This document shows, piece by piece, positions 1,750 to 19,285 of a stretch of DNA of 64,000 nucleotides. Within the stretch, counting starts at the first letter, position 1. Each line of letters starts with the position of its first letter. The notes beneath the pieces are model-generated. The model had not been told where the DNA came from. It did no database searches and saw only the letters and a program-made list of their open reading frames with translations. The position numbers and the translations under genes are program-made. This DNA comes from Octopus sinensis (lineage: Eukaryota), in contig NW_021832430.1 of NCBI RefSeq assembly GCF_006345805.1, forward strand, positions 372,001 to 436,000. Reading direction: 5' to 3'.

Positions 1750-4700
1750 GCCCACAAAACTACTTTTCATCGTCTGAGATATGGTAGTGTTCATAGAAAG
1801 AGTTTTCTTGGACAATTTAATTACTTTCCGATGATCATAACCTCATCTTAACAAATTCTAAAAATCAAACCAATAGTTTTCGATGATTTCACAAAATGAA
1901 GACCGTCATTTAGATTCCAACACGAATCATCAAAAATCGGCAATGATTCTAACAGAAATGGACTCTCTTAAGACAATACCAGGCTCCTGGTCGTATGAAA
2001 GCCTCATGAGTCTGTCGACGTCTGTTATTATAAAAAAGGAATCCAGATATTGTAAAACCTTCTTTACCATTTCTCCCTAAAGACTAAACGGCGAAGCAAA
2101 CGTCTTCGTATATCTTCTTGAGCATATTCGGAATTCCGGCCTTGTTTACGGTAGGTTTCTTAATTATACAAAAATCATCAAAACCGGAGATTCGGCGTAG
2201 ATTTTACTGGAATTGTAATATTTTTGAATCTGAGAAGACATGGTTCTCCACTTGTCGAAATTGACTAGTCCATCGATGTATGAGTCGTTAGCATCATTGA
2301 TGAAGCATAAATCCTTCCGTAATATAGGGAGGTAAGGAATCTAGTTGTTATGAACGTTCAAACTGTGTGTATTTCGCCACTATTCATTTCGCTCATCAAA
2401 GCATTTCTGTAGCAGGCCATATTCCGCAAAGGATCACATAGTTTTGATAACTTTCCAAACATTCTTGTAAACTTAGGGGACACCTTGTCCCAGGATTGCC
2501 GAAGTCGTTGAACTGCACGATGGGATAGACCGCCGATTATTGCCAGACACGCATTAAAGTTGCCCTTTTTTCTTAAAATGTCTATTTTTAGACAAATTAG
2601 GTCAACTGGCCACATTGATTAGAATTGCCAATATTTTGGCACGTTTTGTCAAACTTGGCTCTCCACAAACTGCTGAAATGACCCAAAACATGTCAGTATT
2701 GCACAACTAAGACAGTAATACAATGTCATACATTAGCAAAACACGCCAATTCTGGACCAACTAACTGATCCTTGAGATTACAGATGTCACATATGTAGTC
2801 AAATGGGTCGATACTCCGAAACAATACTCGGTGACGTGAGTCGACCGCCTTGGCTAAATAAGCAGGAGATATATTCTCCAGAAATACAACGTCTTCTACA
2901 GCAAAGTCCTTGAGATTCTCAGTCCATGCAAAGCGTAGAGATTCTCCAGTAGGTTTGATGTAATAACTGCCATTTAGGACTTACTAAGTAAACCGAGAAC
3001 CCAAAGATAAGTTTTTAGAAAGATCTGCGCCGTCCGGGGGAAGACGACGAGACTTTATCAACGAATTGTCTTTTACAGCTACTTCATAAAGAGAATATTC
3101 CCTATTATTAATATAAACAATTATTACGTATTACTCCCTGATTCTTTAAATAGATACAAAGCACTTTCGAGTACTTGTAGAACAGACATTTCCTTTATAC
3201 TAATATAATTTGATTACATTTGTTATTGGTACGTAACGAAAGTTCCTGTCAGTTTTGTATACTTTAATGACATCGACATTAACTCCGTTATTGGGTTTGT
3301 TGAGGAAATTACAACAACGAATGTAGGAAAGGGGTATTGAATTGTCATCTTGTCCCATCCAAGATCTCAGGTTGCTCAAAGAACGACGACCACTTTCCTC
3401 CTGTCTGAAATCTCCACTCAGATTTACAAAAGTATCATTTGTAGTGGTGGAATATGGGATATAATTTAGCGATTTAAAAAATCCTAAAATTAACCAAAAC
3501 TACAACAAAAACCAAATAGGTCGGTCTGAACAACCATCGAGTACTGGTTGGCGGTCGTCAGGATTTTCCTAATCTGGCCAAAAGTAAAGTTCTTGACATT
3601 GGTTTCGTTTATTCTGAGTAGCTAATCATAAGATTATCCAAAATGCAGACCTTGTCTCCACGTCGGAGATCCAACACATCAGATTGTGTGATGAATACCC
3701 CAAATGAAGAGGCAGAGTAGAGAAAGTTGAATTCAGATGAGTCTTCTACAATGATAGTCCGCCTCCTGGTCTTTTTGGAGCACCCGATTGCCATGTCGCG
3801 CAGTTTTTTGATAAATCCCTAACATGAACAAGTCAATTAAACCAATTCTACGATTTTTTTGCAAAAATCGTGTAAAAAACTCCACATTTTGGGATTGTTT
3901 AAAAAATAGGAAAAATGACGATCAACCCATGTTTCAAACAAGTCAATAACCAAAAATATAAATAAAACCAACTTTTTCGCGGAGAATACTCTTTTCTATC
4001 CAAATCGACATTTTTTTGGGCAGGAATGAAGAATCTTCAATGAACACGCGGAAAGTCAGCAAAAAATCAAGGATGTAGTTTTCATCTCGCTTATCGCTGA
4101 TCAGATTATTAATAAGCCATTCCGGTTGTGCCTAAAACACATAACATGGCCATCAACTCTAATCACGATGGGGATATGATCTCTCTTCTCAAAAACACAA
4201 ATTGGTATTCCGTTATTCTTCGTAGAAACCATTGTGGCGTAGGACTAGGCTTGACACCAAAAAACAACATTTTCCAACACTTTTTTATAGTTCTGACTGA
4301 GAACACACAGGAATTGAGTATTTTCAAGTGCTGTGGTCATGATTCCCTTATGGAACTCCCGCTCGTCCTTGCAGGTAACTCCAAAACTGATTTGTTTATA
4401 AATGCGAAACCTGTCGCCCACGGTAAGGGAATAAATGGTTCCGTTGGGGTGTTCGACGTTGACTCCTCCGTTGATGATTACTGACCAACTGTCGTACTCT
4501 TCGTCGTGGGAGAGGACGACTGTGCCTGATTCTTTTATTTCTACGTAGTCCATTACGCGGCAGAGTTCTGTTTTTGTGGCTGCTGTGAGGTTGGAAAATG
4601 CCTGTATGATGATCAAAAGTGTTTTTACAGGCAAATGTTGAGTAAATTCGAGTAGAATTTCTAGTTCTGAATCTAATCGGAGTTCATGGCTCTTTTCGAG

Positions 4701-4799
4701 TATTTCGCATACTAAATCCTGGAATGTACAGCTGGACCGTCCTTGAGAGAGGGTAGGGGAGCCGGTACTATCACTTGAGCTGAATAATGATAGGTTCAT
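1750..4799 (-). CDS. RAPGEF2: PDZ-GEF Rap guanine nucleotide exchange factor (RAPGEF2/6 family), multi-intron; 3' end approximate
   Basis: cNMP-binding domain (LLEFTQHLP..AFSNLT..DSWSVIINGGV, 4245-4799), PDZ region (GVFITQ..LRRGDK, 3609-3794), RasGEF domain (GNFNACLAIIGGLSHRAVQRLRQSWDKV, 2358-2615; IPYLPILRKDLCFINDANDSYIDGLVNFDKWR), and tail KKIYED/GEMVKKVLQYL. Confidence 0.9.
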
Positions 4800-7700
4800 T
4801 TAATATGTGCCTGCGGGATTAGATTATACGACAGAATGATATTTTTGAAAGTTATATTCTCTCAGGAATAAACGTAAATTGAAAATGTACAAACGCAATA
4901 ACAAGCTACAAGGACTATATCTTCTATATTTTTGTTTATATTAATGTGTTAACCAATCAAAATTTCTAATTTAATTTAGATATTTTTATGTATTAAATTA
5001 AAATATAATTAAACAAATTTTAGCCTTATTTCAAATTATTCCAGACTGTTGTCTTCTCTAGAATCGAAATATAATTCTTTCTCGGATTTGAAGTCTTGAT
5101 ATCACTTCTTCCGTCCTGTGTTAAATTTTTCCAACTCGACTCTATAAGCTAGAGTGATAGAATCAAAATGTTTAAACTATGCGAGACGTATTAAAAAATG
5201 ATAATTCAAGTTCTCTTGACACTCTTGAAAGTCTTGTAATGAAATAAAACAATCGTTGTCATCTTAACGTCAAACACATAGAATTCCGTTTTATGTACAA
5301 AAAGGTTGTTATTATTATTATTATTATTATTTAAGCCAAAAACAGAATCACCGTCTTAACCATTAACTAACGTGTTCAGGTGATTCCGACACTTCTCAAC
5401 AGTCTAGCCATCTTTTCACGATGTTCAGACCGTGACCCCACACACTTTCTGTATGTACGGTGAAATGCTTGTGGTCCATCTCCACGATCCCTCCCACTTG
5501 CCTCTACAAGAGACTCCAGTGTTCGATGGACAATTTTCATGTCGGTATGGTCCTTCAGTATGTTTATGGATTTTTCTTGGATTTTCTCGATTTTTAGTTG
5601 GTTCGTTGCCGCCAGGTTACAGCCCCAAGCAGCACATGCATAGCCTATTGTTGGCTCGATATACTGCTTGTAAGGGTCTCTACCCCTGGCGGACAAGTTC
5701 TCCCACAGTTCGAAAGAAAGGCTTTCACAAAATTGATTTTCTTTATATACAAGTTGACACGATCGATTCAACATGAGGTGAGAAACAGAGGAAAGTGTCA
5801 AACGTTACACCCAATATCTTCTGTGTTTTCTTTTGTGGTATTGGGACTCCATTCAGCGTGACTTCAATAATTTTTTTCCCCATCTTCCTGTTTTTCGTGA
5901 ATAGGGTGACTGCTGACTTTTCGGAACATGCATGTAGTCTGTTTTCATATAGCCATCCATATAATTCGTCCAGTATTCTTTGTAGTCTTTCCTTCGCGTA
6001 TTCGACATTTACATCCCTTGATGCGACAACTATGTCATCGGCATAGGAGAGTAGTATGTCATTATTATCCATAGGAACCGGGAGATCATTCAGAAACAAG
6101 TTGAAGAGGGTCGGGGATAAAGGAGAACCCTGGGGTACACCATTGGGCAAAAAGCGTGATCTTGAACTCTCGTTCCCGACGCACACTTTCCCACGACGTC
6201 CGCTCAAAAAATTCGCTATCCATAGCTTCATAGGTGTAGAAATATTTGTACCAAATATCTTTTGAATTAGGATCTTCCTTGGGACGGAGTCAAACGCTTT
6301 TTGAATGTCGATAGTGCATACAATTGATTTCTCCTGCAATTTCTTCTTTTTGTGTCCTTCATTTATGAAATCTGTTAGTGTGGTGAGGAAGGAGGTCGTT
6401 GACAATCCTTCCTTGAATCCATGTTGAAATGTGGATTGTGGGAGGAAAGGGCGAATATGTTTTAGAACCAGTTTTTCCAAGATTCTTGACAGCACACATA
6501 TAAGGGATATTGGTCTATAGGAGCCGGGGTCGTTTTTCGGTCTTCCAGGTTTTAATATTGGCCGGATTTTTGATAGTTTCCATAAGTTCGGTATAGAGTT
6601 CGTGAATAATGATGTGTTATAGATCGTGGTTAAAGCATTTATTGAAACAGGGCCCAAGTGTTTTAGTAGAATAAGCGGAATTCCATCCGGTCCACATGAG
6701 TTTGTTTTCTTCTGATTCGAGATTGTTTCAGACACCTCTTCAGGAAGAAAATAAGTCGTCGGGGGCCTTTTGGATGGCTTTGATTTTAATCTTGACTGTG
6801 AGTTCATTTTTTATAAGGAATATGACTAATCTTGACACAGTGTTTCATAAAATGTTTAGATTGAGCTGATATGTTTCTGTTTTACGCTCGTCAGGATTCT
6901 TTAAGCGTCTCAACATCGTCCACATGGCCGAAATAGAGGCTTTTTATTCATGGCTCTAGAGATTCGGCTGAGCTTCTTCCTTTGGACTTGGTTGGTATTA
7001 TTCGTAATAAGCATGTTTAGAGCCCTGATTCGATCGATGATTACTTTGGGTCGATACTTTCTTTCTTGAGGCTGGTTCTTTCTCTGATTAATTTTTTCGT
7101 TCTTGAGTCATATTTTGAGCTCCCACTTCTTATACATGCTCTTCTGATAATCAAATTTCTTGCATCTATGATAGTTTTGTTGAAGCTTTCCACTGCCCTG
7201 TCCAAGGAAGAAAAATTCTTAGGGTGAAAGTTCTGGAGTCTTGAATCGACGTAATTTGCGAAAGCATTCCAATCTGCGTTTTTGTAATCATAGAAATAAT
7301 TTGGTTTCAGTATGAGATGTGGAGAACAGTTCATTCTCATTATCATTGAGTGGTGGTCACTTCGGAGATCATAGCGGACCGACCACTTGATGATAGGGGA
7401 AAGCCGAGGTGAGCAGATTGATAGATCTGGCGATGTCCTCGTGTCCTTAGAGTTGTAGGGTGTTCGAGTGTTCTTTTTTGGGTTGTTAAGGATTATTAAC
7501 TTCTGCAATTGCGATATCAAAAGGTTTCCTCTGGCATCGGCAGTCTGATATCTGAACCAAGCGGGATGCTTCGCGTTCAGATCTCCGCATAAGAGTAAGT
7601 TATCCAATTTATCAAGGCTTGATAGGTCAAAACGATAGCCCTTCTTGCATGAACCCGGGGGAGGTACGTAGACATTGGCGATTTCAAGTCTTCCGTAGGA

Positions 7701-8000
7701 GGTCATAAGTGAGATTCCAATTATTTCGGTGTTGGAGTCCTTCTTTAGGCTTGTATACGGTAAGGGATTCTCGAAATATTTTATTCCTCTTTTTATAAGG
7801 GTCAGTAGACCCCCTCCATGCTCCGACTCGCGGTCACATCGTAGTGCATCGTATCCAGCAAAAAGAGGAGTAGGGATCCGTTTCGAAAGTTTCGTCTCTT
7901 GGAGAAGACAGATATCTATTCGGTTCTCCTCCAAAAAACTGGCAAGTTCCGCCGTCTTTCCTCGAATCCCGTCAATATTCAGGCATTGTATTGTTAGCTT

Positions 8001-8027
8001 TGGACCGGGATTCTGTTCCACGTCACC
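8001..8027 (-). other. 2A-like ribosome-skipping motif GDVEQNPGP (family A LINE)
   Basis: YYRLLLLTSGDVEQNPG|P directly precedes the APE start (KLTIQCLNIDG) and fits the D(V/I)ExNPGP consensus. Confidence 0.85.
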
Positions 8028-8113
8028 TGAGGTCAACAGCAACAATCGATAGTAAGTGCCAACGTTGAGAAGATGCCGTCCAGGGGGAAGTCCTCTGGTT
8101 GGCGGGGAGCAAA

Positions 8114-8181
8114 TGGTTCTTTTTAGATACCGTTTAGGACTGTATCCGGCGCCACCAGAAAAGGTGAACCACATGACGCGC
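8114..8181 (-). ncRNA. Degenerate HDV-like self-cleaving ribozyme at the 5' end of the family A LINE
   Basis: Manual fold: P1 GCGTC/GGCGC (5 bp only), J1/2 ATG, P2 TGGTTC/GAACCA, P3 ACC/GGT, L3 TTTTCT, GG, P4 ATAC/GTAT, J4/2 CTAAAAA. Topology and P2/P3 match the copy at 15017. Confidence 0.6.
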
Positions 8182-8189
8182 GCTAAAAA

Positions 8190-8590
8190 CATTAAACTCA
8201 TTATAAACTTTCGGAGACAAACTTGAAGAATATTCGGAGGTTAAAGATTTGACAAGGTTTGTGGAACTTTTTTGCTTTATAGTATTTGCTTGTCTTCGCT
8301 AGCAACACGATTGCAAGTGAAGCCTTTTGTTTCGAGAAGATCGTAGGTTTTCCTAGACATCTGTGCCCTACAAGTTTTAGCTTATTTCTGAAAATTTTTT
8401 GTTATTTTCTATATTACGCAGACGATGAACTGTGTAAGTCGGGTAATTCAATATATTTTGTTGTAAGTCGGGTAATTCAAATAATTCAGAGTATTTCTTG
8501 GTCGCCCACGGAAACGATGGCCCCCAGCTTTGAAATAGTCCTCCATAGCGGCGTTTGCCGGTGCATACAAATCCATCCTTAGAATGTGTC
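8190..8590 (-). mobile_element. RTE-like LINE 3' fragment, decayed
   Basis: Minus-strand translation APANAAMEDYFKAGGHRFRGRPRNTL...ENLRSSRNKR resembles RTE C-termini. Contains a 19-bp direct duplication (8433-8451 / 8462-8480). Confidence 0.5.
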
Positions 8591-14836: not shown

Positions 14837-15016
14837 AGTTAAGGCTTCTTGCTGACTTACATTATTGTTTTCCTGAAAAAATTCATTTAAACTTTTTTTG
14901 GATTCTCGGGTACTAAATAGTTTTTTTTTCCTCATGGTTGTTACAAATATTAAGCTCCTAAAAAGTGATTAAATTGGCTATCATTTATAAATAAACATTA
15001 CGGTTCACCTTCTCGT

Positions 15017-15087
15017 GATCGTCATGTGGTTCACCTTCTCGTGGAGACGATTGGATGCTGATTTCACATCAGCAACAAACAGAACCA
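15017..15087 (+). ncRNA. HDV-like self-cleaving ribozyme at the 5' end of the family B LINE
   Basis: Manual fold: P1 GATCGTC(15017-23)/GACGATT(15046-52) with G1.U wobble, J1/2 ATG, P2 TGGTTC/GAACCA, P3 ACC/GGA (one mismatch), L3 TTCTCGT, P1.1 GG, P4 TGCTGAT/ATCAGCA, J4/2 ACAAACA with candidate catalytic C. Confidence 0.8.
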
Positions 15088-15188
15088 ATTTTTCCCCCTT
15101 GCCAACCAACCTGTCAACGGTTTGGTTGGTAGTGGCTACGGGACGAGCGCCAAGCTTACGTTCCCTGACTCTATTGTTGATTCGGTGT

Positions 15189-15215
15189 GGAGATGTGGAA
15201 CAAAACCCTGGACCT
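15189..15215 (+). other. 2A-like ribosome-skipping motif GDVEQNPGP (family B LINE)
   Basis: SLTLLLIRCGDVEQNPG|P directly before the APE (TLTILQLNING). Confidence 0.88.
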
Positions 15216-18200
15216 GAGCCTATTAGAACACTAACCATCCTTCAATTGAACATCAACGGGATTTCCAAGAAATGCAATGACCTACGCTACTTTCTACACA
15301 CGAACTCTATTGATATAGCTCTTATTCAAGAGACCAAACTTACTCCAAAATCCCAAACCCCCCGTTTTAAGGGATATTCCACCATTCGTCGTGACCGCCA
15401 GTCTGGAAAGCCTGGCGGTGGTCTCATTACTCTCATTCACGAGGCCATTCCCTTTGCAGACTCAACTGCCAACATTGAATCTCTCTTAACTAATGATCGA
15501 TTTACCGAAATTTCATCTATTCAAATTAACATTAACAAGATATGTTACTCTGTTGTTAACACATATATCCCCCCGATTTCGTCATGTGCTCCCAATTATA
15601 CACCGAACTTACTGCCTCTTTTTTCAATTGAAAACTGTATTCTATGTGGCGACTTCAACGCCCACCATCCTCTCTGGTTATCCACAAACAAAACTGACAA
15701 ACGTGGCCAGCAAATCACAACGGATGCGGAAGAATTGATCACTCTAAACAACCCTCTTCTACACACCCGCTGTGCAATGCGACCTGGAGATTCAAACACT
15801 TCTCCTGACATTACCTTATGTTCCCCAAACATCGCCCTCGACGCCAAATGGACAGTTCTGTACGACCTACCAACGGACCACAATCCTATTCTAATCAAAA
15901 TAAACCATCACCCTGTAAAGAAGAGAATTACGAAGACCTACATTAACTACAAACGTGGGAAATGGGACTCGTTCAGGAGTGAAACTGAACGTATATTCAG
16001 TAATTTTTCTTGCTCCTCCATTCAATCATTTGACGCTGCCGTTGCTTTCTTTACTAGTACACTTCTTTCTGCGGACAAAAAATTTATTCCCCGCGGCTTC
16101 ATCCGAAATCACGGCCTCCACTTCCCCCCACCTATCATTGAACTATTCAAAAAACGAAGGAGGATCAAATCGACGACTTCTATCAATGGAAATGGAGAAT
16201 CCCTAGCAGAAATCAACAAACAAATTGACGAATTAATCAAGAAACATAAAACTGACGAATGGAATGATTTTATCACTTCAATAACCCCAAATACTGGATC
16301 CCGTGCTTTCTGGAGAACCCCCAAGAAAATTCACACGAGGCAAACATGTCCCCTCTCACATGCCACCGGTATCTCGACCAAAAAATCTGTCCTATCTTTC
16401 CAGGATCAAGCCAACATCTTAATTCGCCATTATGCAAAATTCAGTCACCTTCCTACCCCAAAGGATCTCCGTTTCGTAAGAAAATCACATTATAAGTCAA
16501 ATGACAATTCTACTGACTATATTAACATCCCAGAATCATTTACCAGGCAACTTGTTGTTAACTCGCGGAATTCTAACGCCAGAGGTCCTGATGGCCTTGC
16601 CATCCACCACCTAAAAAATCTGGGTCCTAATGGCTTTCTGGCTCTGACCAATTTAATCGAATACTCGATCAACCATGGTCTGGTTCCTATGCTTTGGAAG
16701 AAATCTACCATCATCCCTATCCCAAAGCCAAATCGTGATACCTCTGACCCCTCCTCTTTTCGACCTATCTCTTTGATCTCAGTGGTTTCAAAAATAACAG
16801 AGCGAGTTGTATTGAGCATCATAAAACCTTTCCTCCCATTTGCTGAATCTCAACATGGCTTTCGTTCTTAGCATTCCACTTCCACCCATCTTTCAAAACT
16901 GACACAATTCATTGCGGATGGGTTTAACAATCATAAGCCACCTCAAAGAACAATTATTGCATCCATCGACATTGAAAAGGCATTTGACAGAACGTCAAGA
17001 CACGTTCTGTGTAGGAAAATAACCGATACGGAATTCCCCCACCAAATAAAGTCATGGCTACTCTCTTTTCTCTCTGGGCGTCTTGGTCGCACCACAATCA
17101 TGTCTTCTTACTCACGCTACAAATACTTGCCTAACGAGTTCCCCAAGGCTCGGTCCTTTCACCTGCCTTATTTAACTTACATCTGTCAAATATCCCGACG
17201 AACAATAATACTCTACTTCTCTCCTACGCTGATGACTTAATTTTTGCCTCCCGCCACCAAAACATAATCACCGCTTCTGGATTTCTGCAGGAACACATGA
17301 ACACTCTTTCGTCCTGGCTGAAATGCAATCTTCTTCAACCTTCTCCTTCCAAATCATCTGTTACGCTATTCACAACTGACCGCCGTCAGTTCAACTTAGA
17401 GCCTAAACTATTCCTAGACAACACTCCACTCCCAGTTGAAAAATCCCCCAAAATCTTGGGTCTGATATTTGATTGCTGTTTGTCCTTCTCGAAACATGTT
17501 TCATATATCTGTGGAAAATCCCAGAAAAAACTCAATGTGCTCCGAGCTATTGCGGGGACTTCATTTGGGCAGGATAAGGAAAGTCTAACAACTGTATACA
17601 AGCAGTTTATTAGAACAACTATGAACTACGCCATCCCTGCTTGGGGTTCCTGCTTATCTAATACAAACCTTGAAAAACTTCAGAGAACTCAAAACTCAGC
17701 ATTACGAATTATTACCGGCTGTCTAAAAACGACACCTACCGACCACCTACATTGGGAATCGAAAATCCTTCCAATCAGTGACCATTTTGAAATGCTCGGG
17801 CTGCAATTTCTTGACAAATGCCGAACCCTAAATCACCCTGGCTACTTCCTCTGGCACTCCACTAACAACAGGAGAATAGTTCCGACCCTCGCGGACAAAG
17901 TCCGCAAGCTTATACGATCCCCTCCGGACATTAACCAGAAGGGGATTCACGACCTGGTGGCTACGAGGGCAATCAGATGTCTTGGAATAAACAAGCTTCT
18001 GGGACGCCTTCCGCCGCCAATTAATAAGATCGAATCCTCCCTCTCAAGAGAAGCCCGAGTGAACTTGGCTCGTCTCCGCTGTGGCCACCATACTGGCCTA
18101 CACGATTATCGCATAAAAATCGGTCTTGGTGAAATAACCCCTTCCTATTCCCTCAACGACCTTTTCTCCTGTCCAGGCCCGCCTCTACTTCCTCGGAACA

Positions 18201-18325
18201 CCGGATCACGATCGGGGATCTTTGGGAGCGTCCGACATTGGCCCTAACGTTCTTGTTAGCCACCGGCTTCCTTCAATTGAAGGGGCCGGGGGTAAATAAA
18301 TAAATAAATAAACATTACATACTGG

Positions 18326-18790
18326 TTGAGCATTTGGTCATCCTTTCGTGGCCTTTTTCTGCCCGGGGCGGCTCTCTCTGAAGACCTCGTTCTCCCAACT
18401 CATTCTTCTTGTCATCTCTGTGGACGTGGTCTGAAGACCTCGTTCTCCCGACTCATTCTTCTTGTCATCTCTGTGGACGTGGAACTTAATCTTAGCCCTA
18501 AAGAACACATCTCATTTTTTAACTGAACATCAATGGGATTACCGGAAGAGCAACCAAATTAAACTCCTTTTTAACCAAACACGACATTGAAGTTGGTGTA
18601 ATCCAGGAAACAAAACTGACCACATCCTCGAGATCCCCACAATTTCCAAACTATCACATGCAACGACTGGACAGACTATCCGGCCGCGGAGGCGGTCTCA
18701 TGACACTCATTAAGAAGGGTATTATCTACCAGGAGAGTTCCGCATTCATTAACGACCAACGCCATTTTTCCGATATTCGTCGTTCCTTCA
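18326..18790 (+). mobile_element. Decayed 5' end of a third 2A-APE LINE
   Basis: LILLVISVDVELNLSP (three substitutions from SGDVELNPGP), then NINGI, IQETKL and RLDRLSGRGGGLMTLIK. Contains a 53-bp tandem duplication at 18378-18482. Confidence 0.7.
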
Positions 18791-18884
18791 ACTTGTTTCT
18801 ATCCAACATCCAGATCACCAACGAAAATAATTTTCGTTAAATTGAAAACGCACTGTACTTCAATTAGAAAAGTTAATTTTGTCT

Positions 18885-19285
18885 ATCTTCGATATCCCCT
18901 ACGAGCCTTCCCCTACGAGCAGGGGAAATCCCTTATTTGGGATTCTACCTGCTCGGACACGTTCTCGCTGGGAAATCTCGCTCTGTCCGCCGCCAATCCT
19001 GGGCACGCTTCCAGGCAGGCCGAGGAGCGAAAGATTCTCAAGTACGGCCACCTCTCCAACTCGCTGCTCTTTACTCCAATTGCCGTGGAGTCCTCCGGGA
19101 TCTTCGGTCCCAAGACACTCCGCTTCCTTCGCTCGCTCGGTCGACGGATTTCAAGGACTAGTCACGATCCAAGAGAGTTTTCTTGGCTCCTGGAACGTCT
19201 GTCGATTGCTGTGATCCGAGGGAACGGCTTCGCCATTCGCGAGGCTGGTCGGGTGTCTCGTGAGGCCTTTAATTAACTTAGCTAT
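18885..19285 (+). mobile_element. CRE-clade RLE retrotransposon, 5'-truncated
   Basis: FPYEQGKSLIWDSTCSDTF...AEERKILKY...FTPIAVESSGIFG...LERLSIAVIRGN. Confidence 0.85.

What the first reader, a model, noticed from the sequence alone, without database searches (positions are those of the whole stretch)
15017..15215. Ribozyme-ATG-2A module: an HDV-like ribozyme apparently translated as a leader and cut off by a 2A site
Seen: 15017-15087 folds by hand into a nested double pseudoknot (7-bp P1 with G1.U wobble, 6-bp P2, ACC-TTCTCGT-GG P3/L3, P1.1 GG, 7-bp P4, C-containing J4/2). The 3-nt J1/2 strand is ATG, in frame with a 63-aa leader ending in GDVEQNPG|P just before the APE. Known: HDV-like ribozymes process R2, RTE and L1Tc/ingi RNAs, and 2A motifs occur in L1Tc and some animal APE LINEs. 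Inference: one compact 5' module makes the RNA end from read-through transcripts, supplies the start codon on an uncapped RNA, and uses 2A to shed the ribozyme-encoded peptide. I do not know this coupling to be described in this lineage.
Basis: partly seen in the sequence, partly recalled or inferred. Interest (0 to 1): 0.82.

Follow-up and report, generated by a model that had tools for sequence, protein, structure and literature searches.

The report
Ribozyme-like start of octopus LINE
The first 71 bases of a jumping gene (a LINE) in the octopus genome can fold like a known self-cutting RNA, hold the element's only start codon, and are read through into a short peptide that a "2A" skipping signal would cast off before the enzyme part; all of this is sequence evidence, and cutting has not been shown.

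Summary
Window 15017-15087 (+) fits an HDV-like nested double pseudoknot. ATG 15024 lies between P1 and P2. It is the element's first ATG and opens a 63-codon leader that ends in GDVEQNPG|P just before the endonuclease. The window is Octopus sinensis. Copy c1 is a full-length, now frame-broken, roughly 3.3 kb single-ORF LINE flanked by a 15-bp target-site duplication.

Support for a selected fold:
- A descriptor set at the observed quality hits only 15017 in 128 kb, against 7 hits in 400 shuffled windows.
- A second subfamily (c2, 8183-8114, minus strand), 53% identical overall, keeps an 18-base exact block over P1/ATG/P2/P3, the P2 partner, the GG and a different P4 hairpin.
- Colinear c1 sequence begins at G15017.

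Weaknesses:
- No Rfam match.
- c2's P1 is cut to 4-5 bp and its L3 lacks the G. J4/2 is long in both.
- c2's genomic 5' ends do not match the homologous cut site.
- Related 2A-LINEs share the core motif without the rest of the fold.
- Too few copies were available for real covariation.

Ribozyme plus N-terminal 2A is already known in L1Tc, where the ribozyme is in the 5'UTR. I read this as a probable new variant of a known kind. Cleavage, initiation and skipping are all untested.

The parts
14987..15001 (.). 5' copy of the target-site duplication ATAAATAAACATTAC that flanks LINE copy c1
   Evidence: The same 15-mer recurs at 18304-18318. Part of it may belong to the (TAAA)n tail.
15002..15016 (+). 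15 extra bases, GGTTCACCTTCTCGT, between the TSD and G15017. They are a copy of internal bases 15028-15042.
   Evidence: The break in colinearity falls at 15016/15017 (+/-1), which is the predicted cleavage site. I infer a template switch at an RNA 5' end.
15017..15087 (+). HDV-like nested double-pseudoknot fold (candidate self-cleaving ribozyme), 71 nt
   Evidence: Descriptor scans, helix check, conservation in c2.
15017..15023 (+). P1 5' strand, GAUCGUC. The predicted cut is 5' of G15017.
   Evidence: Pairs with 15046-15052 as GU, AU, UA, CG, GC, UA, CG.
15024..15026 (+). J1/2 = AUG, the start codon of the LINE ORF
   Evidence: First ATG of the element and the only in-frame ATG before the 2A. 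Same position and context (CGTCATGT) in c2.
15027..15032 (+). P2 5' strand, UGGUU(C)
   Evidence: Pairs with 15082/3-15087. Identical in c2.
15032..15045 (+). P3/L3/P3'. Register B: CAC-CUUCUC-GUG followed by GA. Register A: ACC-UUCUCGU-GG(A).
   Evidence: CGTG at +24..+27 and the layout 'CGTGG-N-P1 3' strand' resemble L1TcRz as rebuilt from its primers.
15046..15052 (+). P1 3' strand, GACGAUU
15053..15054 (+). J1/4 GG, the candidate P1.1 partner of the first two L3 bases
   Evidence: GG is kept in c2.
15056..15074 (+). P4 hairpin UGCUGAU-uucac-AUCAGCA, 7 bp
   Evidence: -7.9 kcal/mol on its own. Replaced in c2 by a different hairpin (GAUAC/GUAUC, extendable) at the same place.
15075..15081 (+). 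J4/2 ACAAACA, A-rich, with C15076 and C15080 as candidate catalytic C
   Evidence: c2 has CUAAAAA: same length, with the C next to P4.
15082..15087 (+). P2 3' strand, GAACCA
   Evidence: AGAACCA is identical in c2.
15024..15212 (+). 63-codon leader ORF MWFTFSWRRLDADF...LLLIRCGDVEQNPG. Its first 21 codons are the ribozyme-like fold.
   Evidence: Translation.
15099..15132 (+). Stable hairpin inside the leader ('hairpin 2'), downstream of the fold
   Evidence: -16.8 kcal/mol, z = -3.4. A hairpin at the same relative place occurs in c2 and in four distant 2A-LINE relatives.
15189..15215 (+). 2A (StopGo) motif GDVEQNPG|P
15216..16871 (+). AP endonuclease and the start of the reverse transcriptase. 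The ORF ends at 16871, so the copy is frame-broken.
   Evidence: Pfam Exo_endo_phos_2 at 4.5e-14 and weak RVT_1; ORF list.
17297..18247 (+). ORF fragment near the 3' end of c1, presumed C-terminal part of the LINE ORF (position only)
   Evidence: ORF list. No Pfam family, hence no RNase H detected.
18293..18318 (+). (TAAA)n 3' tail of c1, merging into the 3' TSD copy (18304-18318)
8114..8183 (-). Homologous 5' module of subfamily c2: GCGCGCGUC-AUG-UGGUUC-ACC-UUUUCU-GGU-GGCGC-C-GG-P4-CUAAAAA-GAACCA
   Evidence: Four near-identical O. sinensis copies share sequence from TTTAGCGCGCGTC onward.
8001..8174 (-). c2 leader ORF (57 codons plus P), from ATG 8174-8172 to the 2A GDVEQNPGP at 8027-8001
5743..8000 (-). 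c2 AP endonuclease (ORF runs to 7041) and reverse transcriptase (6807-5743, in another frame)
   Evidence: Pfam; ORFs.
5306..5335 (-). c2 (AAT)n 3' tail
18319..18540 (+). Decayed 5' region of a third related LINE (c3), starting right after c1's 3' TSD. It has TGGTCATCCTTTCGTGG, an internal duplication, and a degenerate 2A, VDVELNLSP (18467-18502).

Best explanation
Window 15017-15087 is the 5'-terminal RNA module of a compact (about 3.3 kb) single-ORF APE/RT LINE of Octopus sinensis. [quoted passage not shown]

Proposed mechanism:
1. The fold (P1/P1.1/P2/P3/P4) forms on read-through or tandem transcripts. It cuts 5' of G15017, leaving an RNA that starts with the ribozyme. This step is inferred.
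2. The element's only start codon is the 3-nt J1/2 linker, 7 nt from that end, so the ribosome must begin inside the fold and translate through it. The frame and the unique ATG are shown; initiation is inferred.
3. The resulting 63-aa leader, whose N-terminal part is dictated by RNA-structure needs, ends in a canonical 2A. This 2A would release the leader co-translationally, so the endonuclease/RT starts about 8 residues before its first domain. The motif and frame are shown; skipping is inferred.

The c1 copy itself is dead because its ORF is broken. The young c2 subfamily keeps the module in a weakened form.
For: 1. All helices are present as described, and the ATG, leader, 2A and APE share one frame.
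2. At the observed quality the descriptor hits only 15017 in 128 kb, against 7 hits in 400 shuffled windows. The hit lies at the 5' end of a TSD-flanked LINE.
3. c1 and c2 are 53% identical over 1.1 kb, yet share an 18-nt exact run, 15020-15037, covering P1 3' half, AUG, P2 and P3. The next longest run is 9 nt. AGAACCA (the P2 partner) is also kept.
4. P4 has a different sequence in c2 but is still a hairpin at the same place. The GG and an A-rich J4/2 of equal length are kept. In P1 one pair is compensated on both sides (U-A to G-C) and two change compatibly on one side.
5. The peptide across P1'/P4 is not conserved (LDADFTSAT against YSPKRYL) while the hairpin is. This argues for constraint on the RNA rather than the peptide there.
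6. In c1, colinear element sequence starts at G15017. The 15 nt between it and the TSD are copied from inside the element, as expected for a template switch at an RNA 5' end.
7. In four c2 copies, homology to the element begins 10 nt or fewer before the same ATG. The RNA 5' end is therefore at the module in both subfamilies.
8. Precedent. L1TcRz is an active HDV-like ribozyme in nt 1-77 of L1Tc and is followed by an in-frame 2A. Its local layout, CGTGG-N-P1 3' strand-NN-P4, matches c1. HDV-like ribozymes in LINEs are reported to promote translation initiation.
Against: - No Rfam HDV-type family reaches even E = 10 on 14900-15300.
- Nested folding energy is not unusual (z = -1.05 for c1, -1.1 for c2).
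J4/2 is 7-8 nt, longer than I recall for the family, and neither C is at a conserved distance from P2.
- c2 is the subfamily with near-identical, hence recent, copies. Its P1 is reduced to 5 bp (or 4 bp in another register), it has no G in L3, and it lacks the C that corresponds to C15080.
- Its four copies share AGC (plus a T run) upstream of the c1-homologous cut site. This is not expected if that site were cut.
- Distant 2A-LINE relatives carry the motif TTCACCTTTTCG or ACCGTTTTTTGG plus a downstream hairpin, but lack P1', P4 and P2'. Part of the conserved block may therefore serve another purpose.
- Only two independent sequences were available, so covariation is anecdotal. The descriptor thresholds were chosen after seeing the hit.
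Confidence: 0.55

Rival explanations
1. The conserved 5' block is a non-catalytic cis element. It could be an internal Pol II promoter of the Pr77/DPE kind, a protein- or ribosome-binding structure (IRES-like, or a handle for the element's own RT), or a translation-start context. On this view the RNA 5' end is set by transcription initiation. The HDV-like pairing in c1 is then incidental, or a fossil that no longer cuts.
For: - The c2 copies are recent, yet their fold is degraded, and their shared 5' boundary lies upstream of the homologous cut site.
- The core motif plus a downstream hairpin is shared with relatives that lack the rest of the HDV fold.
- c1 has CGTG at +24..+27, close to the DPE position +25..+28 reported for L1Tc Pr77.
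- No Rfam match.
Against: - It does not explain why the 55 nt that c1/c2 have beyond their relatives supply exactly P1', GG, P4, an A-rich J4/2 and a P2 partner. It also does not explain the strict-descriptor rarity.
- c2 lacks CGTG.
- Promoter activity and ribozyme activity coexist in L1Tc, so this rival is not exclusive.
Confidence: 0.28
2. The fold is a chance or hand-fitted match. The 18-nt block is conserved because the leader peptide MWFTFS (and RT..SP.PT) is selected at the protein level, for example as part of the context that 2A needs or as a functional peptide.
For: - A loose HDV topology is common by chance: 0.53 per window, about 35 loci with a looser descriptor.
- The frame is the same in c1 and c2, and MWFTFS and RT are kept.
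- Many 2A-LINE leaders share a VF[SWL] motif upstream of the 2A.
Against: - The conserved run starts 4 nt upstream of the ATG, in non-coding sequence.
- The 4-fold site in ACC and the TTC codon are unchanged, although divergence elsewhere is 47%.
- Peptide selection does not predict P1/P1' complementarity, a hairpin kept with a changed peptide at P4, or the strict-descriptor statistics.
- The motif lies about 55 residues before NPGP. I recall the context that influences 2A as being about 30 residues; I did not check this.
Confidence: 0.1
3. The fold is a real ribozyme but is not coupled to translation. The leader would be an accidental open frame, translation would start elsewhere (non-AUG or internal), and the 2A would serve other ends, such as setting protein ratios as proposed for L1Tc.
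For: In L1Tc the ribozyme is called 5'UTR. The 2A there is said to influence the balance of translation products.
Against: A 2A must be translated from upstream. There is no other in-frame ATG between the 5' end and the 2A in either subfamily. Both keep 57-63 stop-free codons from the same ATG.
Confidence: 0.07

Closest known systems
L1Tc (Trypanosoma cruzi, Ingi clade): Pr77/L1TcRz HDV-like ribozyme plus L1Tc2A
   Same: - An HDV-like fold occupies the first 71-77 nt of an APE LINE, with the cut at +1.
- A canonical D(V/I)ExNPGP 2A follows, in frame with and just upstream of the endonuclease.
- The local layout CGTGG-N-(7-nt P1 3' strand)-NN-P4 is shared, and CGTG lies near +25.
- Both elements have a single ORF.
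   Different: - In L1Tc the ribozyme is described as 5'UTR, and an ATG appears only near +138 (primer L1Tc55+152r). Here the ATG is J1/2 and the whole fold is coding.
- I could see no sequence homology beyond that short motif; the first 24 nt of Pr77 were not available to me.
- The octopus element is about 3.3 kb, has no detectable RNase H, and ends in a (TAAA)n or (AAT)n tail rather than poly-A.
- L1TcRz activity is experimentally shown. This one is untested.
[quoted passage not shown]
   Same: - The position and the presumed job match: freeing the element RNA from co-transcripts and giving a structured 5' end that supports cap-independent initiation.
- The conservation pattern resembles R2: the P3/L3 core is conserved, P1 is compensated and P4 is variable.
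   Different: - The host clade is undetermined. On my reading of the RT motifs it is not RTE or R2-like.
- I found no published case with the initiator AUG as J1/2 plus a 2A that removes the encoded peptide. I could not read Ruminski 2011.
- J4/2 is longer than I recall for the family.
- No Rfam model matches.
2A-like sequences at the N-terminus of metazoan APE LINEs (Rex1, L2, L2A, Crack, CR1, Ingi; Odon et al. 2013)
   Same: The 2A lies 40-80 aa from the N-terminus, immediately before the APE, mostly in single-ORF elements and including molluscs. The motif and the Leu-rich upstream tract match those families.
   Different: That work discusses no RNA element in the leader: 'ribozyme' occurs 0 times in the text. 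It covers no cephalopod.

Membership tests
HDV-like self-cleaving ribozyme | Nested double-pseudoknot order: P1, P2, P3, L3, P3', P1', J1/4 (P1.1), P4, J4/2, P2' | tested here: met
   c1: 7-bp P1, 5-6-bp P2, 3-bp P3 (register B), 7-bp P4, all in the right order. c2: met only with a P1 of 4-5 bp.
HDV-like self-cleaving ribozyme | Occurrence beyond chance | tested here: met
   Strict descriptor: 1 real hit, against 0.0175 per shuffled window. Loose descriptor: not significant, 0.53 per window. Thresholds were set post hoc.
HDV-like self-cleaving ribozyme | G at +1 forming a wobble or pair at the base of P1, with the cut 5' of it | tested here: met
   G15017 pairs with U15052. Sequence-level only.
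HDV-like self-cleaving ribozyme | Catalytic C in J4/2 at the usual short distance from P2, followed by purines | tested here: inconclusive
   c1 has C15076 (5-6 nt from P2') and C15080 (1-2 nt from P2'). c2 has only a C next to P4. J4/2 is A-rich and 7-8 nt in both. The usual spacing is from my memory.
HDV-like self-cleaving ribozyme | P1.1 (two pairs between the start of L3 and J1/4) and a G near the 3' end of L3 | tested here: inconclusive
   GG is present in both. Its partners would be C-G plus U.G (register B) or two U.G pairs (register A). c1 has a G in L3 only in register A. c2 has one only in the 4-bp-P1 register. The importance of the G in L3 is stated in PMC3774820.
HDV-like self-cleaving ribozyme | Compensatory changes in helices across homologues | tested here: inconclusive
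   Only two independent sequences. The P4 sequence is replaced but remains a hairpin. In P1, one pair is compensated on both sides, two are compatible on one side, and one is lost to a 1-nt deletion. P2 and P3 are invariant.
HDV-like self-cleaving ribozyme | Match to a curated covariance model (Rfam HDV, CPEB3 and drz families) | tested here: not met
   No hit at gathering score in the window, and none at E <= 10 in 14900-15300. These models cannot score pseudoknots, and I recall each family as narrow.
HDV-like self-cleaving ribozyme | Genomic full-length 5' ends coincide with the cut site | tested here: inconclusive
   c1: colinear sequence starts at G15017, but 15 internally derived nt precede it. 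c2: four copies begin at T(3-5)AGCGCGCGTC. That is 3 nt or more upstream of the homologous site, but at the site of the alternative 4-bp register.
HDV-like self-cleaving ribozyme | Mg2+-dependent self-scission giving a 5'-OH product | not testable with these tools
   Needs in vitro transcription or RNA-end mapping.
2A / StopGo recoding peptide | C-terminal motif D(V/I)ExNPG|P preceded by a hydrophobic, Leu-rich tract | tested here: met
   c1 has SLTLLLIRCGDVEQNPGP and c2 has RLLLLTSGDVEQNPGP. These resemble dozens of LINE 2A leaders.
2A / StopGo recoding peptide | In frame with an upstream start and a downstream protein | tested here: met
   ATG 15024, 63 codons, then APE (Pfam).
2A / StopGo recoding peptide | Ribosome skipping in a reporter | not testable with these tools
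   -
L1Tc/ingi Pr77 hallmark (dual promoter-ribozyme) | Sequence homology to the 77-nt hallmark, and membership of the Ingi clade (RNase H domain, poly-A tail) | tested here: not met
   No RNase H by Pfam in the ORF fragment near the 3' end of c1. The tail is a microsatellite. Only CGTGG and the helix layout resemble L1Tc nt 25-77. The full hallmark was not available, and the RT clade was not determined.

The most novel reading that the evidence does not exclude
A protein-coding HDV-like ribozyme. The initiator AUG is the J1/2 linker, so after self-cleavage it lies 7 nt from a 5'-OH end. The ribosome translates the whole catalytic fold. The N-terminal 2A exists to discard the peptide that the RNA structure forces on the ORF. 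If this holds more widely, it would explain why 2A in single-ORF animal LINEs always sits 40-80 residues from the N-terminus: the leader would be a translated cis-acting RNA module. That module could be a ribozyme and/or the conserved U-rich motif plus hairpin seen in relatives.
Probability: 0.3. Interest if true: 0.72.

Novelty: new variant of a known kind. Interest (0 to 1): 0.55.

Why it matters
Three points, all conditional on cleavage being confirmed.

[quoted passage not shown] This element would add a cephalopod host, and probably a new clade.
- **Dual use of sequence.** It would show a catalytic RNA fold and an open reading frame occupying the same bases.
- **A testable reason for N-terminal 2A in LINEs.** The 2A papers left this open (PMC3708506, PMC3894237). 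The 2A would let an element place its start codon at the extreme 5' end, inside an RNA structure it cannot change freely, without fusing the resulting junk peptide to its endonuclease.

Compact single-ORF LINEs (Vingi, RTE, L2) and ribozyme-bearing 5' modules are now being built into RNA-only gene-insertion tools (PMC13708176). A self-processing, self-initiating 5' module of 200 nt would therefore have practical interest.

Tried and rejected
- **Rfam.** Nothing relevant on the whole window (gathering score), on 14900-15300 (E <= 10), or on relatives L001-L003.
- **More copies by DNA pattern.** ATGTGGTTCACCTTYTC in metagenome and viral contigs gave 125 loci. All were chance matches: none has GAACCA or a 2A downstream.
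- **More copies by protein.**
  - The c1 leader alone found nothing.
  - The best whole-ORF relatives are 37% identical.
  - An all-against-library phmmer search with the first 110 residues found no second MWFTFS leader.
  - Only c2's cluster gave extra copies: three O. sinensis loci, about 99% identical, hence useless for covariation.
- **HDV fold in distant 2A-LINE relatives** (L001-L003, L134). There is no consistent P1/P1' or P2/P2', so I rejected it.
- **Covariance model from c1 and c2.** Not built. MAFFT misaligns P1', P4 and J4/2, and two sequences carry too little information.
- **Clade assignment.** No reference RT set was on hand: the supplement of PMC3708506 is not held, and Ruminski 2011, Webb 2009 and Kojima 2011 are not held.
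- **Upstream AAATAAACATTAC.** I first read it as the tail of an older tandem copy. It is better explained as the TSD.
- **U run plus hairpin in relatives as a -1 frameshift site.** The heptamer does not fit X XXY YYZ in frame, so I dropped the idea.

Full report
**What is there.**

Bases 15017-15087 (+) read GATCGTC ATG TGGTTC ACC TTCTCGT GG A GACGATT GG A TGCTGAT ttcac ATCAGCA ACAAACA GAACCA.
- P1 has 7 bp and begins with G15017.U15052.
- P2 has 5-6 bp.
- P4 is a perfect 7-bp hairpin.
- GG follows the P1 3' strand.
- J4/2 is A-rich and has two C.

The weak spot is P3. A one-base shift (CAC 15032-15034 with GTG 15041-15043) gives three clean pairs, a 6-nt L3 that starts CU (able to pair with the GG), and a 2-nt linker to P1'.

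ATG 15024-15026 is exactly J1/2. It is the first ATG of the element and the only in-frame one before the 2A. The frame then runs 63 codons (MWFTFSWRRLDADF...SLTLLLIRCGDVEQNPG|P) into an AP endonuclease recognised by Pfam.

**Where it sits.**

The window is Octopus sinensis, contig VCDQ01001009.1. Copy c1 is a complete insertion. The 15-mer ATAAATAAACATTAC occurs at 14987-15001 and again at 18304-18318, just after a (TAAA)n tail. The element is therefore about 3.3 kb, with one ORF of about 1070 codons (2A leader, APE, RT), now broken by frame changes. No RNase H is detectable.

Between the 5' TSD and G15017 lie 15 bases (15002-15016). They are an exact copy of 15028-15042. Colinear element sequence thus starts at G15017 (+/-1 because of a shared G), which is the predicted cut site. 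I read this as a template switch made when the reverse transcriptase ran off an RNA that began at G15017. This is an inference.

**Is it more than chance?**

Topology alone is not. A loose descriptor finds dozens of loci, and a moderate one gives 0.53 hits per shuffled window. At the quality actually observed, the only hit on either strand is 15017, and 400 dinucleotide shuffles of the window gave 7 hits in all. The thresholds were fixed after seeing the hit, but the location adds independent weight: it is on the 5' end of a LINE, a few hundred bases out of 128,000. Nested-only thermodynamics is unremarkable (z = -1.05), as might be expected for a pseudoknot. Rfam gives nothing.

**A second subfamily.**

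A related LINE on the minus strand (c2) has the same 2A (8027-8001) and the same start, CGTCATGTGGTTCACC. Over the first 1.1 kb, c1 and c2 are 53% identical, yet they share an 18-base exact run at 15020-15037. The next longest run is 9 bases; it lies in the endonuclease-coding part. They also share AGAACCA, the P2 partner.

Between these blocks the sequences differ, but c2 again has GG, a hairpin (GAUAC/GUAUC, extendable) where P4 should be, and an A-rich J4/2 of the same length. The peptide there is unrelated (LDADFTSAT against YSPKRYL), so the constraint in that stretch is on RNA.

In P1:
- U-A becomes G-C, a change on both sides.
- Two pairs change compatibly on one side.
- A one-base deletion in the 3' strand leaves 5 bp, or 6 bp with a bulged C.

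A different register gives a 4-bp GCGC/GCGC P1 with a perfect CAC/GUG P3 and a G at the end of L3. An active R2 ribozyme with a 4-bp P1 is on record (PMC3774820).

**What c2 says against the idea.**

c2's ORF sits in a 90% cluster with three other O. sinensis proteins. Their loci (L130-L132) are about 99% identical to c2 from TTTAGCGCGCGTCATG onward and unrelated upstream. So the c2 RNA begins 10 nt or fewer before the ATG, which fits a 5' end made at this module.

However, the shared AGC (behind a T run of 3-5) lies upstream of the cut site homologous to c1's. That fits only the 4-bp register, or a transcription start. In the homologous register c2 also lacks a G in L3 and the C matching C15080. 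The recently active subfamily may therefore not self-cleave, or may cleave differently. I could not decide this from sequence.

**Wider relatives.**

The best database relatives of the ORF are 30-37% identical, and many carry N-terminal 2A leaders.

The DNA of four of them (L001-L003, L134) shows a motif, ACCGTTTTTTGG or TTCACCTTTTCG, followed within a few bases by a strong hairpin. It shows no P1', P4 or P2'.

c1 and c2 have the same motif and the same hairpin (15099-15132, z = -3.4). About 55 extra bases lie between the two, and those bases are the ones that complete the HDV-like fold.

This cuts both ways. Part of the conserved block is older than, and perhaps independent of, the ribozyme. 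But the extra segment looks built for the fold.

**How it most likely works.**

1. Cleavage 5' of G15017 frees the element RNA from read-through transcripts (inferred).
2. The structured 5' end carries the only AUG 7 nt from the terminus, so initiation is presumably cap-independent, as reported for other LINE HDV-like ribozymes (Ruminski 2011, cited in PMC6765202 and PMC13725137). This step is also inferred.
3. The ribosome reads through the fold.
4. The 2A releases the 63-residue leader so that the endonuclease starts clean. The motif and frame are shown; the skipping is inferred.

I put 0.55 on a present or recently active ribozyme, 0.28 on a non-catalytic 5' element or promoter, and the rest on chance, peptide selection or an uncoupled ribozyme.

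**Comparison with what is known.**

HDV-like ribozymes at LINE 5' ends are established for R1, R2, R4, RTE, LOA and Ingi (PMC5786205). N-terminal 2A is established for Rex1, L2, L2A, Crack, CR1 and Ingi LINEs, including molluscs (PMC3708506). L1Tc has both.

From the published L1Tc primers, nt 25-77 read CGTGG-T-GCCAGGG-TC-(hairpin)... This is the same local layout as c1's CGTGG-A-GACGATT-GG-(hairpin), with CGTG at almost the same distance from +1. In L1Tc, though, the ribozyme is 5'UTR and an ATG appears only near +138.

The octopus elements differ in three ways:
- The AUG lies inside the fold and the fold is translated.
- They are compact.
- They lack RNase H and end in microsatellite tails.

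Their clade could not be fixed here. The 2A papers do not mention ribozymes at all.

**Verdict.**

- It is a new variant of a known kind if cleavage is confirmed. The claim rests on two independent sequences and no experiment.

Noticed in passing
window 15099-15132 (+); 8059-8089 (-); L001 1629-1663; L002 1668-1702; L003 146-186; L134 212-246: A strong hairpin sits in the leader between the U-rich motif and the 2A. It occurs in all six LINE families looked at, with different sequences (z = -1.2 to -3.9). Its 3' strand encodes the common W-L-A / L-L part of the 2A upstream tract, and its 5' strand often encodes R-P or E-Q. It may be a conserved RNA element of 2A-LINE leaders that I have not seen described.
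   Followed up: partly
L001 1615-1627, L002 1654-1666, L003 134-145, L134 196-212; protein leaders: Dozens of unrelated 2A-LINE leaders share a (T/S)VF(S/W/L) motif about 20-30 residues before NPGP. In the DNA fetched it is always GTTTTTT or TTCACCTTTTC, so the constraint may be on nucleotides (a U run followed 3-6 nt later by the hairpin). Its function is unknown.
   Followed up: partly
window 18319-18540 (+): A third, decayed LINE 5' end (c3) begins 5 nt after c1's 3' TSD. c1 therefore inserted just upstream of an older relative's 5' end. c3 has an internal 53-nt tandem duplication and a degenerate 2A, VDVELNLSP.
   Followed up: partly
window 8184-8195 (-); L130-L132 about 1480-1492: The four c2 copies are preceded by a T run of variable length (3-5) and then a constant A. 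This could be untemplated A-addition to the cDNA, a target preference, or part of the element. It is undecided.
   Followed up: partly
window 18842-19276 (+) and L004 about 3300-3560: An ORF (FPYEQGKSLIWDSTCSDTF...) resembles a stretch that lies upstream of an unrelated truncated LINE in another O. sinensis contig. It is probably a further repeat family.
   Followed up: no
window 4245-4799 (-): A 184-aa ORF (...VVLSHDEEYDSWSVIINGGVNVEHPNGTIYSLTVGDRF...) lies next to c2's 3' end. It does not look like a transposon and may be a host exon.
   Followed up: no
L134 29-100: A perfect inverted repeat of about 31 bp (GCTTAAGGTGGACGCAGCCCTGATGGAG...CTCCATCAGGGCTGCGTCCACCTTAAGC) lies upstream of that relative's leader ORF.
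   Followed up: no
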